A stretch of 64,000 nt of DNA, taken from NCBI GenBank assembly GCA_002104905.1, contig MCFE01000031.1, positions 124,001 through 188,000 on the forward strand. The letters run 5' to 3'. Below are positions 12,973 through 61,106 of this stretch, piece after piece. The position numbers and the translations under genes were made by a program. Origin of the DNA: Basidiobolus meristosporus CBS 931.73 (lineage: Eukaryota > Fungi > Basidiobolomycota). Position 1 is the first letter of the stretch. Each line of letters begins with the position of its first letter. The notes below the pieces were generated by a model. The model did not search any database. It was given only the letters and a program-made list of their open reading frames with translations, and had not been told where the DNA came from.

Positions 12973-13641
12973 ATGTCAGGCTTCTATTTTGCGATTGTTG
13001 GGAACAAGGATAACCCAATCTATGAAGCTGAGATTGGCTCGCCAGCTAGAGAAGTTGCCAAGGTATTTGTTAGAAACCTGCTTTCTACATTCTTCTTAGC
13101 ACTTTATAAACCGTTACGATTTAGAATGACGACACAAAACATTTATATCAATTCGTGGCTCATAGCGCTTTAGACGTAGTAGATGAAATGATATGGACAA
13201 CGAATGCACTGTAAAGTGACTATTTAATTGCTCCTCTTCGCACGTTCCGAGCTTACTCATTTTACTTGTAGTTACTTGAAAACAGTCGACAAATACAACG
13301 ACTGGTTCGTCTCCGCTTATGTAACCCCTAGCAGTATCCTTTGCCTGTCACTATGATTTTCAAAATGCTCTACATTCAATGTATTATCCCTTCACCAGGT
13401 ACAACAGATGTTCGATTGCTGTTGCTTCATGAAGCCAAGAACGATGACGCCATCTTCAACTTTTTCAAAGATTGTCACGAGCTTTATATTCGGGTAAAGG
13501 TCACATTTCTTCAAAAGGTCCACGGTACATTCTTATCCTTTTCAATAGGCTTTGATGAACCCTTTCTATGAGCAAAACTCTTTGATCACCTCTACCAGCT
13601 TTGATACCAAAGTACGTGCTCTTGCCAGAAGATATCTTTGA
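12973..13641 (+). CDS. TRS20: TRAPP complex subunit 2 (sedlin/Trs20), 5 exons
   Basis: MSGFYFAIVGNKDNPIYE..HLYQFVAHSALDVVDE..YLKTVDKYNDWFVSAYVT..MNPFYEQNSLITSTSFDTKV. Confidence 0.93.
13334..13407 (+). other. U12-type GT-AG intron in TRS20
   Basis: Donor GTATCCTTTG; branch-like CCCTTCAC 13 nt from AG; phase 1, restores VTPS-N-VRLL. Confidence 0.8.
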
Positions 13642-21913: not shown

Positions 21914-23737
21914 ATGGACAAGTACCAAGTATGATATCGTTTGCTCTCTGGTTCTTTCCCTTGGCTTGATTTTGCTCCACATACATTCGATGGCTATGGC
22001 ATGTCGTTGATCCCTTCCCATATCTCCCTTCTCACCTCGAATATGCACGATCCTCTTCAACTGTCACCGAGCTAACCTAAACTTCCTCTATTTTATTATC
22101 TATCCAAATCTCCGTCGTGTGCTTCCGTCTTACTCTTGCACTCTACCCCACCCGACCTTCACGAAACTCTCAATAGAAAATAGAAAAGCTAGGAGAAGGT
22201 AGGTTTCTCCGGCTGCTTACGAACATGAAGGAGAAAGTGAGTTACCATCCTTGCTAACGACTCGGTCGTAATTAGGCACATACGGTATTGTGTATAAAGC
22301 ACAGAACCGAGAAACCAGCGAAGTAGTAGCTTTGAAGCGGATACGATTGGATAATGAAGAGGAGGGGGTATGTTGACCTGAACCTTAGCTTCTATTTTAC
22401 GCTGAATACATGTATATTTTGCGCAATGCAGAGAAGACTGACGTTGGTTTCATTGTCTGAAGGTCCCGTGTACAGCTATTAGAGAAATATCCCTACTGAA
22501 GGAACTCAAACATCCAAATATTGTTAGGTGAGTACGATACCATGAAAAGCTGGGAGAGTTTGTATGCTCGCTTGGTTCAACAATGATTGGTTGTTGCTAA
22601 AGTTTCTTCCGACTGTTCAAAGGCTCTATGATGTTCTGCACACCGAGAAAAAGCTCACACTAGTGTTCGAATACCTAGACTCCGATCTGAAAAAATTCTT
22701 GGATACTTACGGTGGAGACATCGACGTGTTCACAATCAAGGTACATGCTCACTTACAGCAAGTGCTCAATCGTGGGTGTCGTTAATCATATCCTACTTGC
22801 TATTGCTATAGCAACTCATGTACCAACTGCTTCTGGGCATCGCCTTTTGTCACGAACATCGAGTGCTTCATAGAGTAAGAACAGCGATTGCTCTGGATTC
22901 CGTAGGCGTACCGGCTAACCTCTTCCACTAGGATCTGAAACCACAGAATCTGTTGATCAACAAAAAGAACGAACTCAAGCTAGCGGATTTTGGATTGGCA
23001 AGGGCATTTGGCATCCCAGTCAGAAGTTACTCGAATGAAGTGGTGACACTGTGGTATCGTGCCCCTGATGTGCTGATGGGCTCCCGACAGTACTCTACCT
23101 CCATCGATGTGTGGTCGGTTGGATGTATCTTTGCAGGTCTGTGAACGTTCTCGTCCAGTTGAGCAACTTCGGGATTACTCACATTGACATAGAAATGGCA
23201 TCCGGAAGACCTTTGTTCCCGGGAACATCCATTAATGACCAGCTAATGCGCATTTTCAAATATCCTTTTTAAACTTCTCTTGTGCGGCAATTCACGTGAC
23301 CCTGTTGTGCCCTTGACTTTCAGTTTACAGTGCAAGGAACGCCCACCGAGGAAACATGGCCTGGCGTCTCCCAGCTAGCGGACTTCAAGGTAGATCAATT
23401 ACCCTCGGTGTGCCGACACAACTACTAACCACTGGGTGTATAAACCAGAAGGACTTCCCTGTTTATCAGAAGGTACCACTAGAGACCCTCCTGCCCAAGC
23501 TAGATGTGCACGGGATAGATCTGATCAATGTGAGTGGGCGTAAGTATCGATGATATCCGTGACGACTGCTAATTGCTCTGTCCACAGAAACTACTCGAGC
23601 TCCAGCCAGAGAAAAGGATCAGCGCCGAGAACGCGCTTCAGCGTAAGTTATCCACAATCCACAGCATGCGAGATCCCGGTTGACAGGACTTCAATCCCAC
23701 AGATCCATACTTCGACGGGCTAAACAGGAAGGAATAA
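21914..23737 (+). CDS. CDK5: CDK5/Pho85-family cyclin-dependent kinase, 12 exons
   Basis: [62 protein letters not shown]. Confidence 0.88.
23260..23328 (+). other. U12-type AT-AC intron in CDK5
   Basis: Donor ATATCCTTTT; branch CCTTGAC ~12 nt from terminal AC; joins [11 protein letters not shown]. Confidence 0.92.
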
Positions 23738-23868
23738 CCAAGGAACACGTCCCGATCACCCATCAGAACCCACAAACCAGTTAATTTCTAATAAAGTCAA
23801 CAGAGTACTAGCAAAGAAAAGGCCAGTTTATTAAATCAACAAATGGAATCAACTGTTGAGGAAGGGAT

Positions 23869-24420
23869 TTATTGACGGCTAGCAACCAATCTCTTGCGGG
23901 CCAATTGGCGCTTGTTGAGCTTGGGGGCCTTGCCATCATCCTCACGCTTAACAGTGGCATCCTCCTCGGCAACGATGATCTCGATGTGGCAGGGGCTGCT
24001 CATGTAAGGGTTGATTCTACCGTGGGCACGGTAGGTACGTCTACGTTGCTTGGGAGCTTGGTTCACTTGGATGTGCTTGACAATCAAAGACTCGGTCTCC
24101 AAACCCTTGTTCTCAGCGTTGCTGTGGGCGTTCTTGAGAAGACCCAACAAGAATTCGGCGGACTTGACGGGCCAGCGTCCCTTGGTGGTACCGAAGGCCT
24201 TGGCTTGAGCGCAGCGACCAATGCCACCGGCGAAGCGGCGGAAAGGAATGCATTGCTTGTGAGACTTGACATCCTCGAGGTAGGTGATAGCCTTGTCCAA
24301 CTTCATGCCGGAGATGGCAGCGGCGGCCTCGCGGGTGTTCTTGAAGTGGACACGAAGGTAAGAGCCACGAGTTTGGGCAGACTTGGCGCTGTTAGCGGGA
24401 GTGGCAGAGTATCTAACCAT
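23869..24420 (-). CDS. RPL17: 60S ribosomal protein L17 (uL22)
   Basis: MVRYS...[14 protein letters not shown]...[21 protein letters not shown]; probable 5' UTR intron 24436-24568. Confidence 0.97.
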
Positions 24421-25056
24421 CTTTTATTAACTGACCTGTAAGGGAAACGTTCCAGCATTAATCTAAGTATATGGACATGGGATGGATGCAACGGAGATTC
24501 GAACAGATTGCACCATCTCCTCTCGAAATCATGTGCAAATCCCAACAAACGTAATTCTAAAACTTTACCTACAAGAGTAAGCTCGAGAGGTATGGTAGCG
24601 GAGAGAGACAGCAACCCAGTCAGTGCCAGAGTCTATATCTGATGGCAGTTGGTTTCTATCGGCCGATCCTATTGGCTGGCAAACAAATGCGCAAATTTTT
24701 CCTCTGATGAGCGGCACTCCACCACCCATTCTGATGAGCCGGCCCTCCTCCACCTTTCCACATCCACCGAACTCTTGTCCCGCATCCTAATTAAATATGC
24801 TTTATTGTAAACCGACTGAAGTATGAGAAATGGGTTGTGTTCCAAATGCACGAGGGAAGAACGAATACAAGCGAAGTAATAAAAGCAAGAGAACGGATTC
24901 TAACGAAATTAACAAAACAAACAGTCTGTCGCTCGGCTTCTTCGGGGTGCGAGCTTCATTAAAAGTAGACAAAGAACAAGAGAGGAGAATGTAACCAATA
25001 TATATACAAGGGTTCCATCGCTGATAGCTGCGTTAGCTTTTTAAATAGAATCTAGT

Positions 25057-40860: not shown

Positions 40861-41678
40861 ATGATAAAGTCAGTGCTGATATTCAATAATCACGGGAAGC
40901 CTCGGTTGATGAAATTCTACCAGCAGATCGTAAGAACACTGAGTCTACCTCGAGCATCTTTCGAAACCATCGGTTTACTTACATTGGTTTCCCTCTTAGG
41001 ATGTTACTATTCAACAAAAGATTCTAGAGGAAATATTCAGTCTGGTCTCTGAAAGACTAGATACCGAGTGCAACTTTCTGGAGGGAAGCACGCTTTTGGG
41101 GGGACCTGACACTCGCATCATTTATCGAAACTACGCGACTTTGTACTTTGTGTTTGTGGTGGATTCCTCGGAGAGCGAGCTCGGAATATTAGACCTGATT
41201 CAGGTAAGTAGGACCCCCCTGTCGCTACCATATCCTTTTACTTATATAGAGCACGAAACAGGTGTTTGTCGAAAGCTTGGACCGCTGTTTTGAGAATGTC
41301 TGCGAGCTCGACTTGGTATTTTAAACACGACTTTAAGTTATTCCTCCCCTCTTTCTAATAGCTTACATCCCCCCCCCCTACCTGTAGATTTTCCATTGGG
41401 AGGAGGTAATTAATGGCAGTTGATATTTCTGTTCAACCCTCACTTTCTAATTCTCTGGTTTAGATTCATCATATTTTAGCTGAAGTGGTCACCGGTGGTA
41501 TGGTAAGTGCACAATATCAGACAACATGAATATAAGCTAACACTGCCCTGTGCAGGTTCTTGAGACGGACCTTGAGAAGATTACCCTAGCTATCCGGGAG
41601 GCAAACAAGTTGAAGAAGTCCAGTAGCTATACAATGTCTTCCATGAAACTAGATCAGCGTAGAAACTTCATTGGATAA
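40861..41678 (+). CDS. APS3: AP-3 complex sigma subunit, 6 exons
   Basis: MIKSVLIFNNHGKPRLMKFY, YRNYATLYFVFVVDSSESELGILDLIQVFVESLDRCFENVCELDLIFH. Confidence 0.92.
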
Positions 41679-51729: not shown

Positions 51730-54700
51730 ATGGACTTGGAGTCCAACGCCGCTGGAATCATAGAATGGGTATGTTCTCACCGTCATCTAAATAACCTGTA
51801 GTCTTACATGTATCTTTCGCAGGTTAATACTTTCGGCTCTATTACTCGTAAAGCTGAAACAATTGCCGATTTTTCTGATGGGATTCTCCTATGGGAGGTA
51901 CTCGCTGAAATGTATGCTGTACTTCCAGGCTATTGCTTCTTCTCACTACATGACCGGTTACTTATGCTTTGTTGAACGAACAGCGATCCTCAGTGGTTTA
52001 AACTCATTCGGTCTGCTGACGTTGGAGACAACTGGGTTCTAAAATTCAATAACCTCAAAAAGCTATACAAATTAATTACCCGATACTACGAAGAAATCCT
52101 GGGCCACTCCTCAGACTTACTAGATGCACCCAACCTTACCTCCATCGCCAAAGACGGGGAAATAAACGAAACCTTGAAGCTGGCTTCACTCATCGTTGCT
52201 TTGGCGGTCCAGTGCGAAAGCAACGCAATCTACATCGAGAAAATCCAATCTCTTACCCAGGAGGCTCAGCATGCTTTGATGTTGGCCATTGAACAGGTCA
52301 TAGTTCTTTTTTGAATCGGGTCTGTTGACCACCGGCCACTAAACCGTTCTCTCGATAGGTCATGAGCAAACTTGGTGACGAACAAGCTGTGGAGAAAGTT
52401 GAGAATCCTCAGCTTATTGCGTAAGTAGTATTTGCGTGAAGTGAAGGTGGTGCGAGTTAACATGGTTGTGCCCGTATGTAGGGACCAGCAGATCCTTGAA
52501 TTGGAGGCCGATAGGGCTCGTGTGATAAACGAGCATGAGGAGCTTAAGCATAACTACAACGAATTAATGGAGGACCATAAGCAGCTTGAGTACAAGATTG
52601 TCGGTATTCATTGGGATCTTTACGCAACTATTATTTATTCACATCCCTTATGATATTAGGAGGATTTAACGACCGAGAAATCCGACCTAACGAACAGACT
52701 ACGGGATTTGGAGCAAGTAGTTGCGAGGGCTGACCAAACTGGCAAAGCAGATTTCTTGATGAGAACCGAAATTGACAATCTGAAGCAAGACTTGTATGGC
52801 TTTCTTAGTGACAGTCTAGATTGATTGAGTGCACCATACTTACTTCGTTCACTTCAGGGAACGGGCTGAGACTCAACGTCACGAGGCCGAGATGCTCTCC
52901 AGTCAACAGGAAGGCCTAATCAACGACCTTAACCGCAAGGTTCGCTTTTCTCAAAAACAATGGCATTCATGATTTCAGACTAACTTGTCAATCAGCTTGA
53001 GGATATTTCCAAGAAAGCCGATGAGGCGACAAAATTGAAGGATCAGTTGCAGGAATATAAGCACGCTGCTGAGAAGCTTCAAAAGACAGAGAATGTGATT
53101 GAGAAGTACAAAAAGAAGCTGGAAGAAAGCACCGATCTCCGCAAGCAAGTTAAGGTATGGGGCGTGGTAAAGCTGGGTTCGGGGCTCTGATATATACTAA
53201 TGAGCCTATTAGACTCTGGAGGATCAAAACAAACAGTTGGTTGAGAGAAATCATCACATCGAAGAGGAGTATCGTAAAGTCAGCCAATTCAAGGCGTTAA
53301 TGGATTCCTACAAAGATCAGATTGCGAATCTAGAAAGCAAAAACAATCTTTTGGTGATCGAGAAAAACAAGCTGGAGTTTGAATTTGGAAAGCTCAAAGA
53401 GCAGTACGATATGCTTGAACTAGAGCGAAATAGCGACAACGAGCAACTCCAAGTTCTTGAAGATCGCCTTCGTGAACTGGAGCTTGGCGGTAATTGTTTG
53501 TGAATAGTTTGCTGTACTCCTTGGTTTTAACGTTTAGTTCCCCAGGTGGAGGACTCGGTCTTGAGCTTAACAGAGCTCATAATGGAGATGGAGATTCTGA
53601 AGTTCCCAGCCAAGGTCTCAGTGAGGCGCTGGCGGAGTCTAGTGCCACAGAGCTGCAAGTATAGTACCGACTCCTTACTAACCGATAGTTGATAATAACT
53701 GGTGCATTTTTTCCAGGAAGCTCAAAGTAATGCGCCTGGAACGGGAAGTGCAGGCAATGCACCAGACAAGAAACGACCCTGGAAACGCCCAGCAAATAAT
53801 TTTGTTGGAAAACCTATTGGAGGATTCCAACAGAATGAAAGGCAAATTCGAGCAAGTATGTCACAGAATTCAGGCTTTTCGTTTACCAGCGTCCATACTA
53901 ACCTGGCATTTTAGGACTATCTCAAAGCGCATCAGCAAAACCTTGTTCTTGAAAACGAAGTAGAGATGCTGAGAGCTGCTGCCTCCGGTGAAGATCCTGA
54001 TCGGTATGACACAAGCTGAACCACCACTACAGACATCAGTAAGATGCTGACACATTCCTGCATCTAGTGCCGCCAGCGATTTCGCCCTCACCCTGCGAAT
54101 GAGACTGAATGATTCTGAGAAGGAGCTCTCTGAAGCGAAGGAGAAGCTTGCCGCAGCAGAGGCGAAGCTTGCAAGTGTTGAGAAAGAGCTGGTGATTTGT
54201 AAATCCGATCGTATCCTTTACACTACGAACCAGTGGTTTCACCATCCAACCTGCATTCCTTGTTGTCCTTGATCGTATTTCACAGTGAACTTGGTCGGAA
54301 AAGACAAACTAGACGCTCTGGCGGCCATTCGCGAAGAGGCAGGTGCCGAGATCAACAAGCTTCAAAAAGAATACGATAGCTTGGTTAGTCGCAACCGCGA
54401 GCTCGACGCCGAAAACAAAAAGCAGATGCTCCAGATCAATGAGCTCCTCATCGAAAAGGATTCAGTTCAAACGCAGAACATCCAAAGCAAAGACATCTTG
54501 CTTGAAAAAGAGCGAATCAACAGGTATTGCTGAATTAGCCCGTCTCCAATTCTCCCTGCTGACTGATTACTGGGTTCCAAGTGAACTAAAGGCAACGCTT
54601 GCAGCATTGGAGAGTAAGAACAAGACAGGCGATGCGGAGCCTCTCAAGAACCAGCTGCTTACTGAATCCCAGAAAAATCTCAAGCTTCTCGAGGAGATTG

Positions 54701-58744: not shown

Positions 58745-61106
58745 CTACATCTGATTGGTCTCAGGAATAATGGAGTTTGAGATGTCAAGCAATGCCTCGA
58801 TTGACGGTTGCAGTTGACCTTGATTAGCTTGTAGAATTAATTCGCATATGTCAGCCTCAATATTGGGAAACATGTCTCTTAGTGTAGACAGTGCTTGGCT
58901 ATATTCCTGGTATTGCTGTTCTTGCATCATGGCGTTATGTTGTCTTTGTATTTGGCTGAGGGCACCCGGATATGCTGGGTTGGTGGATGGATTGGGAGGG
59001 CTGGACTGTACTTGTGATCTGAGATACCCGCTGTTAGCGGACTGTCTGTGGTTTTGCTCATACTCATCATCAAAATCGGATCCAATGTCTGAGCCAACCG
59101 AGTCTCTAGCTTGAGGATGCAGATGGTTTTGCTCGGATTGGCCAGGGCGGAGAGTATCATCAAAGCTGCGAGATCTAGCCATAGGCTCTGAGGAGCATTG
59201 CTTCCGTGCAATTTCCTCGACTGCTTTATCGATATTTCTAATAGAAAATTGTTAGAGCAGAGATGTGTTGGACTGTACGTCGTACGTTGCGCTTGCCTGT
59301 TAAACTCTTCCTCAGAAATAGAAAGCTGCTTGTAGTCCATATTCTCGATGAAAGAGATAGCCCCCATCTATTCAAGGTTGGTTTCTATCAGTTAGAGCAA
59401 TGAAACCAGTGCCAGGGTTCGATGTCTCTTACTAGGTTTGTCAAGTAGTACTCCGACTCGGCATGGAGCTTCTCAGGTCTTCTAAACCGTGATATGTACC
59501 TAAGGATAGCTAGTATCAGCACCGGGATAGTATAAGCCCCCCTCATCGCCACTTACTGAACATTTGATACAAGTCGCTCCGGATTAGCGCGTAACACTAC
59601 GAAGATCAGGATCGGAAGAAACTTATCGGCACCTGCTTCAGCATCCACATGCTTCAAAAAACGTGAGTCAAAGTTAAGGATACAACATATGACCACAACC
59701 AAGTCACACTAAGCACTGAAGGCAAAAGGATATCAAAGATCACAATGCAACAATTCAGAATGCAGATAAGTTTGTCGCGAGGAGCCTTGTATGTATTTAT
59801 CTTCGCGAGTTCTGATGATTATGGTGTTCGGATTAATACAACAGCTCCATGTATATAGTTTCGCTGATGATAGCTACATACCAGCTTGAGCAAAGCCCAG
59901 GAATGACTCGTTGTGCTTGTTTACGGGAATATCCAGATGCTCCTCTTTTATCCAGCGATAAAGCTGGACTTTCTGGTTAAGGATGTCGTCTTTCTCCACG
60001 TCGTCAGCAGTGAGAGGGCAGAAAGTGCTAGGGTAAGAAGGGAGCATGAGAAAGAGCTTCTAGCCACTCGGAATAAAACCCAATATCTACTATTTATAGA
60101 GCTTGTTCATAATTAACTTTTCCATTCCCTCCAACGCATTTTCAAAGTCAACTTCGGAACATCTGGCCCAGACTTCACAGTTCCGCATATCGTACGCGAT
60201 ATCCTATTCACAGGTAGGTTTTAGCAAGGTGTTTGCTTTGTGCTGAAACGGGTCACTTACGTTCAAGAAGCCATGGATAGCTTGAATTTGCTCGTTTACA
60301 GTGTATGGTTTACGTTGAAAACTAGCCAGAAATCTAACCAAGTTTTAGCACTCGATTGTTATGGAACTGGTGGAAAGTGTAGTCACCTTTTTAGACTGCG
60401 TGCAACAGGAACGGCACTTCTATGTCGGATTTGGTCCAAAAAGCGATGATACTCGAATTGGTCGGTTTTTTGAGTATTCTCCGGGCTGTCCGGTGCATTG
60501 AGAGCCTTATCATGTTGCATACCAGAAGTCGAGCTAGGCGTACCACCGTAGGAGATTGATTTCTGTAAACTTTCGCCTCGAATTCTTCTTTTAGCAGCTG
60601 TTTTACTCTTGGCTTTTGTTGATTGCTCGTCTGATACTTCGGTAGGAAGAGTTATTGAGTCCTCCGAACTCGCTTGGATCGTAGGTTTTTCTGATGGATG
60701 ATGGGTTATTAACAAAGGAGAGGGAGCTGAATACGCAAAGAGAAGAATCTCAACCATTTTCCAGATTGTTGAGTGGATCGAATTCAGCCACCAGGTCGTT
60801 TCTCGCCTTATGGCCGGAGCCAGATGATGGAGATTTCTGTTGGTCGAAATCATCTGGAATGTCAGGGAAGGCCTCTATATATATTTTCGGCGTCAAAGCT
60901 TGACCATCTCTGGAGGAATTCAAAATGAATGCGAGTTTTCTCAAATAAATGCTGAGAGGAAATACTAACTGCATAGTGCTCTCGTTAGAATCATCAGTCT
61001 CCTGGGGTAGCAAAGTATCCTGCCCCGTATTCAGTTGGAGTTTCTCTTTTAGTTCGGCAGATACACCGTTATCCTCAAAGCTTTCGGGTTGCACACTCGA
61101 CTCCAT
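58745..61106 (-). CDS. VPS9: Vps9 Rab5 GEF with C-terminal CUE domain, ~9 exons
   Basis: YHRFLDQIRHRSAVPVARSLKRFL, KINTYKAPRDKLICILNCC, GADKFLPILIFVVLRANP, EYYLTNL, AISFIE; CUE LRDMFPNIEADI. Confidence 0.9.
59663..59733 (-). other. U12-type AT-AC intron in VPS9
   Basis: Donor ATATCCTTTT; perfect branch TATCCTTAAC 11 nt from terminal AC; joins CIVIF-G-FLKHV. Confidence 0.95.

What the first reader, a model, noticed from the sequence alone, without database searches (positions are those of the whole stretch)
23260..23328. AT-AC U12 intron in CDK5 at the position of the classic mammalian CDK5 AT-AC intron
ATATCCTTTT...CCTTGAC..TTTAC splits the codon after IF in phase 2, before V-Q-G-T-P. Mammalian CDK5 intron 9 is one of the first described AT-AC introns. 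From memory it sits at IFR|LLGTP in phase 2. That would make this an opisthokont-ancestral minor intron that kept its AT-AC subtype, and it supports CDK5 orthology.
Basis: partly seen in the sequence, partly recalled or inferred. Interest (0 to 1): 0.78.

Follow-up and report, generated by a model that had tools for sequence, protein, structure and literature searches.

The report
Ancient AT-AC minor intron in CDK5
A 69-base intron in this fungus's CDK5 gene is a genuine rare "minor-spliceosome" (AT-AC) intron at exactly the same codon and phase as the CDK5 minor intron of vertebrates, so it is over a billion years old, but introns of this kind were already catalogued in this genome.

Summary
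Window 23260-23328 (+) is a 69-nt intron. It starts ATATCCTTTT, has a CCTTGAC branch site 12 nt before a terminal AC, and lies in phase 2 between ...DQLMRIF and VQGTP.

The gene has 12 exons and encodes a 292-aa CDK5-like kinase. It is identical to the public Basidiobolus meristosporus CBS 931.73 protein P0187, so the public model already uses this junction.

An AT-AC intron lies at the same codon and phase in:
- thorny-skate CDK5;
- Basidiobolus ranarum;
- Syncephalis;
- Acaulospora;
- Rhizophagus;
- the chytrid Dinochytrium.

Published mouse and human CDK5 minor-intron 5' sites read CCG|ATATCC. The intron is absent in Mucor, Mortierella, Spizellomyces, a sea cucumber and a midge.

Two corrections apply. 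A plant CDKA gene has an ordinary GT-AG intron at the same codon and phase. The position is therefore older than CDK5 and does not by itself show orthology. No RNA reads were available for this junction.

The novelty is low. B. meristosporus is published as having about 249 minor introns, and the scan has flagged many other AT-AC introns elsewhere in this genome.

The parts
21914..23737 (+). CDK5-like kinase gene with 12 exons, encoding 292 aa. Exons: 21914-21928, 22177-22198, 22276-22367, 22463-22527, 22623-22740, 22812-22874, 22932-23136, 23193-23259, 23329-23389, 23449-23529, 23588-23642, 23703-23737.
   Evidence: Every exon translation tested is identical to public protein P0187 (Basidiobolus meristosporus CBS 931.73, named 'Cell division protein kinase 5'). 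CDK5 is the best match among solved structures, at 425 bits.
23193..23259 (+). Exon 8, encoding (E)[21 protein letters not shown](K). It ends with the first two bases of the split codon.
   Evidence: It aligns with human CDK5 residues 198-216.
23260..23328 (+). Intron 8: a 69-nt AT-AC U12-type intron in phase 2.
23260..23268 (+). U12-type 5' splice site ATATCCTTT.
   Evidence: It matches the RTATCCTTT consensus exactly.
23311..23317 (+). Branch-site motif CCTTGAC. The presumed branch A at 23316 lies 12 nt before the 3' end of the intron.
   Evidence: The same CCTTGAC variant is found in the skate and is listed for mouse and human CDK5.
23327..23328 (+). 3' terminal AC.
   Evidence: It is the only acceptor that restores K-VQGTP.
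23329..23389 (+). Exon 9, encoding (K)[20 protein letters not shown].
   Evidence: It aligns with human CDK5 residues 219-237.

Best explanation
Window 23260-23328 is a functional U12-dependent (minor-spliceosome) intron of the AT-AC subtype. It is intron 8 of the Basidiobolus meristosporus CDK5 orthologue.

Inferred mechanism: U11 snRNA pairs with ATATCCTTT at the 5' end and U12 snRNA pairs with CCTTGAC. The 3' site is set by distance, 12 nt downstream of the branch A, at AC. Removal joins AA|A to restore ...RIF-K-VQGTP.... Failure to splice gives a stop after four codons.

The intron is homologous to the AT-AC intron of vertebrate CDK5 (codon R217, phase 2). It was inherited from at least the last common ancestor of fungi and animals without changing subtype. 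It was lost independently in several fungal lineages (Mucor, Mortierella, Spizellomyces) and animal lineages (sea cucumber, midge).

Shown here: the sequence signals, the unique in-frame solution, the identity to the public protein, and the same position, phase and subtype in seven other taxa.

Inferred: that it is spliced by the minor spliceosome in vivo.
For: - The signals are present and significant.
- AT-AC is the only frame-preserving junction, and the spliced product equals P0187.
- The intron maps to the codon aligned with human CDK5 R217.
- An AT-AC intron lies at the same codon and phase in Amblyraja radiata (1482 nt), B. ranarum (152 nt), Syncephalis pseudoplumigaleata (85 nt), Acaulospora colombiana (80 nt), Rhizophagus irregularis (78 nt) and Dinochytrium kinnereticum (95 nt).
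- Between the two Basidiobolus species the intron body differs in length and sequence, while the 5' site, the branch site and the terminal TTAC stay the same.
- Mouse and human CDK5 minor-intron signals are published as CCG|ATATCC.. and ..CCTTGAC... Mouse Cdk5 U12-intron retention has been assayed.
- Six of the nine mapped skate introns share position and phase with Basidiobolus, and two more with Rhizophagus.
- B. meristosporus is published as having 249 (or 237) minor introns and U11, U12 and U6atac genes.
- In a quick tree the protein falls in a fungal CDK5 clade (98*) that groups with animal CDK5 (83), apart from PHO85.
Against: - The only two runs found were relatives, and their contigs cover only the neighbouring ribosomal-protein gene.
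- The 3' dinucleotide of the mammalian intron was not seen directly.
- The Syncephalis copy has its only good branch motif about 35 nt from the 3' end, which is unusual for a U12 intron.
- CDK5 scores only slightly above other CDKs in PDB bit scores (425 against 404-422). The clade joining fungal and animal CDK5 has modest support (SH-aLRT 83, quick search).
Confidence: 0.92

Rival explanations
1. The intron position is older than opisthokonts and older than CDK5 itself. An intron sat in this codon in the ancestral CDK of the last eukaryotic common ancestor. CDK5 genes hold it as a U12 AT-AC intron, and CDKA/CDK1-type genes hold it as a U2 GT-AG intron after a type conversion. This refines the best explanation rather than contradicting it.
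For: - The tea-plant CDKA-like gene (P0131/L008) has a 256-nt GT-AG intron at IF-AG|A-VLGTP, the same codon and phase, with no U12 signals.
- It also shares the phase-2 intron at codon 65.
- A metagenomic CDK1-like model (P0108) reads ...KIFR-CVHAG...-LGTP. This is what a retained phase-2 GT intron at this site would give.
Against: - Only one plant locus was examined.
- Parallel insertion at a favoured AG|R site cannot be excluded.
- No U12 intron at this site was seen outside opisthokonts.
Confidence: 0.55
2. The fungal and animal AT-AC introns arose independently by parallel gain at the same site.
For: There is no direct evidence. The site follows an AA/CG dinucleotide in a conserved motif, and chance coincidence of intron positions is known to occur.
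Against: - Position, phase, U12 type and AT-AC subtype are identical in three fungal phyla and in vertebrates.
- The intron is embedded among six to eight shared U2 intron positions.
- Published surveys describe significant minor-intron gain as extremely rare.
Confidence: 0.03
3. The stretch is not removed as annotated. It could be a U2-spliced intron with other ends, a retained segment, or a sign that the gene is a pseudogene.
For: No RNA reads were available.
Against: - There is no GT or GC donor.
- Both nearby AG acceptors break the frame.
- Retention gives a stop after four codons.
- The AT-AC product is a complete 292-aa kinase that is 97% identical to the B. ranarum product and colinear with human CDK5.
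Confidence: 0.03

Closest known systems
The U12-type AT-AC intron of vertebrate CDK5 (mouse and human CDK5 minor intron; intron 9 by inference)
   Same: - Same codon in the alignment (human R217, fungal K216).
- Same phase 2.
- Same ATATCCTT 5' site.
- Same CCTTGAC branch-site variant.
- Same AC end, seen directly in the skate.
- Same flanking peptide DQLxRIF|x|xxGTP.
   Different: - It is 69 nt long, against 415 nt (mouse), 561 nt (human) and 1482 nt (skate).
- The split codon encodes K rather than R.
- It is intron 8 of 11 rather than the inferred intron 9, because some other introns differ.
Catalogued minor introns of Basidiobolus meristosporus and Rhizophagus irregularis (Larue & Roy 2023, PMC10639083; Olthof et al. 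2024, PMC11347168)
   Same: - Same genome and same class of intron.
- The papers report 249 (or 237) minor introns in B. meristosporus.
- They also report that a subset of Rhizophagus minor introns sit at positions conserved with animals and plants.
   Different: Neither paper's text, nor the one supplementary file of PMC10639083 that is held, names CDK5. I could not check whether this particular intron is in their lists.
The U2-type GT-AG intron at the same site in plant CDKA (Camellia sinensis locus L008)
   Same: It lies at the identical codon and phase, after ...KIF.
   Different: - Its termini are GT-AG.
- It has no U12 5' or branch motif.
- It has a pyrimidine-rich 3' region.
- It belongs to a different CDK subfamily.

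Membership tests
U12-type (minor-spliceosome) intron, AT-AC subtype | The 5' splice site matches /ATATCCTT. | tested here: met
   ATATCCTTT lies at 23260-23268.
U12-type (minor-spliceosome) intron, AT-AC subtype | A branch-site motif TCCTTRAC lies about 10-15 nt upstream of the 3' splice site, with no long pyrimidine tract between them. | tested here: met
   CCCTTGAC is present with its A at 23316, 12 nt before 23328. The intervening sequence is CTTTCAGTTTAC.
U12-type (minor-spliceosome) intron, AT-AC subtype | The 3' terminal dinucleotide is AC, and it gives the correct reading frame. | tested here: met
   Only AT-AC reproduces P0187 codon by codon.
U12-type (minor-spliceosome) intron, AT-AC subtype | The junction is seen in transcripts. 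| tested here: inconclusive
   No run holding this gene was found. The contigs that were laid cover only 23822-24420. Indirect support comes from the public 292-aa model and its conservation.
U12-type (minor-spliceosome) intron, AT-AC subtype | Removal depends on the U11/U12/U4atac/U6atac spliceosome. | not testable with these tools
   The literature reports U11, U12 and U6atac genes and a divergent U4atac candidate in B. meristosporus. No snRNA gene lies in the window.
Orthologue of the vertebrate CDK5 minor intron | Same alignment column and same phase. | tested here: met
   The intron is in phase 2 in the codon after ...RIF in the window and in the skate. The exonic CCG before ATATCC in mouse and human fits TTC CG|.
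Orthologue of the vertebrate CDK5 minor intron | The host genes are orthologous (CDK5 clade). | tested here: met
   - A quick ML tree joins the fungal clade (98*) with animal CDK5 and holozoan sequences (83), apart from PHO85 (94).
- The best PDB match is CDK5.
- Eight of the nine mapped skate intron positions are shared with Basidiobolus or Rhizophagus CDK5 genes.
- Support is moderate, not decisive.
Orthologue of the vertebrate CDK5 minor intron | The intron is present in several deep lineages on both sides, so that inheritance is more parsimonious than gain. | tested here: met
   - Fungi: Basidiobolus (two species), Syncephalis, Acaulospora, Rhizophagus and Dinochytrium.
- Animals: the skate directly, and mouse, human and marmot indirectly.
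- Among animals, only vertebrates were shown to have it.

The most novel reading that the evidence does not exclude
The intron site is a relic of the last eukaryotic common ancestor, older than the split between CDK5 and CDK1/CDKA. It has stayed a U12 AT-AC intron without any subtype switch in every CDK5 lineage that keeps it, from chytrids to mammals. In CDKA/CDK1-type genes it has become an ordinary U2 intron. That would give a clean, datable example of subtype stasis and of conversion between intron types after gene duplication.
Probability: 0.35. Interest if true: 0.45.

Novelty: new member of a known kind. Interest (0 to 1): 0.25.

Why it matters
The finding gives a concrete single-gene example of a minor intron kept at one codon, with one subtype, since before fungi and animals diverged.

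It also has a practical use. Gene predictors that allow only GT-AG introns damage this gene:
- At least 15 public CDK5 models from early-diverging fungi lose all or part of exon 8.
- Bat and marmot CDK5 models break at the same junction.

It does not change what is known about minor splicing. Basidiobolus is already published as the fungus richest in minor introns.

Tried and rejected
- RNA evidence. The look-up of sequencing runs returned only two low-share runs, and their contigs (88-95% alike) lie only on the neighbouring uL22 ribosomal-protein gene. This said nothing about the CDK5 junction.
- Exon queries. An exon cannot retrieve full-length relatives in the word search because of the length window. 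I therefore ran the representative search with exon 7. I then ran a region-restricted word search with P0008, which gave named fungal orthologues and the window's own protein, P0187.
- Literature on mammalian CDK5. Searches for a statement that it is an early-described AT-AC intron found nothing usable. Levine & Durbin 2001 is not held.
- Literature on the fungal intron. Searches with CDK5 or Pho85 found no paper on a fungal copy.
- Rfam scan of the window. It gave no hits.
- The ATATCCTTT at 41230. I rejected it as a U12 site because it lies inside an ordinary GTAAGT...TATAG intron.
- Phylogeny. The skate row carried spurious N-terminal residues from its gene model, which explains its long branch.
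- Compliance. The joined spliced model was never typed into or sent to a search tool; the identical public protein P0187 was used by reference instead. No human contig was fetched. The human and mouse 12-mers read in a paper's supplement were not sent to any tool.

Full report
**The observation**

The window sequence at 23260-23328 reads ATATCCTTTTTAAAC...GTGCCCTTGACTTTCAGTTTAC.
- The first nine bases match the U12 5' splice-site consensus RTATCCTTT exactly. That consensus has 5 matches in the window against 1.4 expected.
- A composite pattern was also tested: ATATCCTT, then CCTTRAC, then 8-15 bases, then AC. It matches only two places in the window and none in 100 shuffles. The second match is 59663-59733 on the minus strand, which the scan had already noted.
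- The presumed branch A (23316) lies 12 nt before the last intron base.

**The gene**

Reading the surrounding sequence gives a 12-exon gene on the plus strand, 21914-23737, encoding 292 aa.
- Ten introns are GT-AG. Intron 8 is the AT-AC one.
- It splits codon AA|A (K216) in phase 2, between ...[10 protein letters not shown] and [11 protein letters not shown].
- No GT or GC donor exists at that point.
- The two neighbouring AG dinucleotides give the wrong frame.
- Retention would give a stop after four codons.

**The organism and the public model**

An exon-7 search of the representative library and a region-restricted word search gave named relatives.
- Exon-by-exon comparison shows that all eight exons tested are 100% identical to P0187. 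P0187 is a 292-aa protein of Basidiobolus meristosporus CBS 931.73, named 'Cell division protein kinase 5' in UniRef.
- P0187 reads ...RIFKVQGTP..., so the public model already uses the AT-AC junction.
- A codon-by-codon check of the window against P0187, which builds only the split codon at each junction, accepts AT-AC there. It accepts GT-AG at the other nine resolvable junctions.
- I did not send a joined spliced model to any search tool. P0187 served as its reference.

**Is it the same intron as in vertebrate CDK5?**

- Exons 8 and 9 align with human CDK5 residues 198-216 and 219-237 in solved structures. The split codon therefore corresponds to R217.
- The thorny-skate (Amblyraja radiata) CDK5 locus shows ...ATC TTC CG|ATATCCTTTT...(1482 nt)...TCCTTGACACCTTCAC|C TTG CTG GGG. 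This is AT-AC, phase 2, in the same codon.
- Supplementary file 3 of Olthof et al. 2019 (PMC6717393) lists 5' sites CCG|ATATCCTCC and CCG|ATATCCTTG and branch sites containing CCTTGAC for mouse and human CDK5. The exonic CCG fits TTC CG|.
- A marmot gene model that runs into the intron reads ...KRIFR-YPSLPL, as expected from CG|A TAT CCT TC..
- Mouse Cdk5 is an assayed U12-intron gene.
- 'Intron 9' is consistent with the mapped skate introns plus two upstream introns seen in the sea cucumber gene. It remains an inference.

**Distribution**

An AT-AC intron at the same codon and phase is present in:

| Taxon | Intron length |
|---|---|
| B. ranarum | 152 nt |
| Syncephalis pseudoplumigaleata | 85 nt (good branch motif unusually far from the 3' end) |
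| Acaulospora colombiana | 80 nt |
| Rhizophagus irregularis | 78 nt |
| Dinochytrium kinnereticum (chytrid) | 95 nt |

- Between the two Basidiobolus species the intron body is not alignable and differs in length. The 5' site, the branch site and the terminal TTAC are nevertheless kept, as expected under selection on the splicing signals.
- No intron lies at this site in Spizellomyces, Mucor circinelloides or Mortierella alpina. The same is true of the sea cucumber Apostichopus japonicus and of a CDK5 gene whose protein cluster includes a midge protein.
- Six of the nine skate introns that could be mapped share position and phase with Basidiobolus, and two more with Rhizophagus.
- Inheritance from the common ancestor of fungi and animals, followed by repeated loss, is therefore by far the simplest reading. 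No retained copy has switched subtype.

- The tea-plant CDKA-like gene has a 256-nt GT-AG intron with no U12 signals at the very same codon and phase, IF-AG|A-VLGTP. It shares further intron positions with CDK5 genes.
- The position is therefore probably older than CDK5, and on its own it is not evidence of CDK5 orthology.
- Orthology is instead supported, moderately, by a quick maximum-likelihood tree. The fungal clade has SH-aLRT support of 98. It joins animal CDK5 and holozoan sequences at 83, apart from a PHO85 clade at 94. That PHO85 clade includes a separate Diversispora paralogue.
- CDK5 is also the top PDB match, though only narrowly.

**What is missing**

No transcript evidence was obtained. 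The only runs found are relatives, and their contigs cover just the neighbouring uL22 gene.

**Novelty**

- Larue & Roy 2023 report 249 minor introns (0.554% of introns) in B. meristosporus, the highest density known in fungi. They also report Rhizophagus minor introns at positions shared with animals and plants.
- Olthof et al. 2024 report 237 minor introns and the snRNA genes.
- Neither paper names CDK5. No searchable paper describes the fungal CDK5 intron.
- The scan itself has flagged many AT-AC introns in this genome.
- The finding is real and neatly documented, but it is a new example of a known kind.

**A practical by-product**

At least 15 public CDK5 models from early-diverging fungi drop all or part of exon 8. 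A bat model and a marmot model break at the same junction. This is the typical damage done by predictors that allow only GT-AG introns.

Noticed in passing
window 54211-54285 (+): This is a probable GT-AG U12-type intron. It reads GTATCCTTTA...TCCTTGAT, with the branch A at 54272, 13 nt before the CAG at the 3' end. It is in phase 1. The frame is open on both sides, in a coiled-coil-like ORF (...ICKSD | LNLVGKDKLDAL...). It is not among the scan's notes for this window.
   Followed up: partly
window 41230-41238 (+): This ATATCCTTT lies inside an ordinary short GTAAGT...TATAG intron (about 41204-41249). It is a chance match, not a U12 site.
   Followed up: yes
window 59663-59733 (-) and 13334-13342 (+): There are two further U12-type candidates in the same 64 kb. 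One is an AT-AC intron with TCCTTAAC, the other starts GTATCCTTT. With 54211 that makes four candidates in one window, which is high for a genome published with about 249.
   Followed up: no
L008 3102-3357 (Camellia sinensis CDKA-like gene): A U2-type GT-AG intron lies at exactly the same codon and phase as the CDK5 AT-AC intron (KIF-AG|A-VLGTP). The site is shared across CDK subfamilies and kingdoms.
   Followed up: partly
Public proteins P0008, P0152, P0154-P0156, P0158, P0162, P0169, P0170, P0173, P0174, P0188, P0192, P0210, P0224, P0228, P0253; P0097, P0099: CDK5 gene models of many Glomeromycotina lose or truncate exon 8 or add residues at this junction. So do models from Apophysomyces, Absidia glauca, Dinochytrium, Blyttiomyces and Syncephalis. 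A bat model and a marmot model break at the same junction. These look like annotation errors caused by the AT-AC intron.
   Followed up: partly
window 23880-24421 (-): A ribosomal protein uL22 (RPL17-type) gene lies tail-to-tail with CDK5. The same neighbour (Pfam Ribosomal_L22) follows CDK5 in B. ranarum (L011 3002-3230), so local gene order is conserved. Contigs from two public runs of relatives match only this gene.
   Followed up: partly
P0037 (Diversispora eburnea) against the CDK5 clade: Glomeromycotina carry a separate PHO85-like paralogue as well as the CDK5 orthologue. Early-diverging fungi therefore appear to have both kinases, whereas yeast Pho85 is usually treated as the CDK5 counterpart.
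   Followed up: partly
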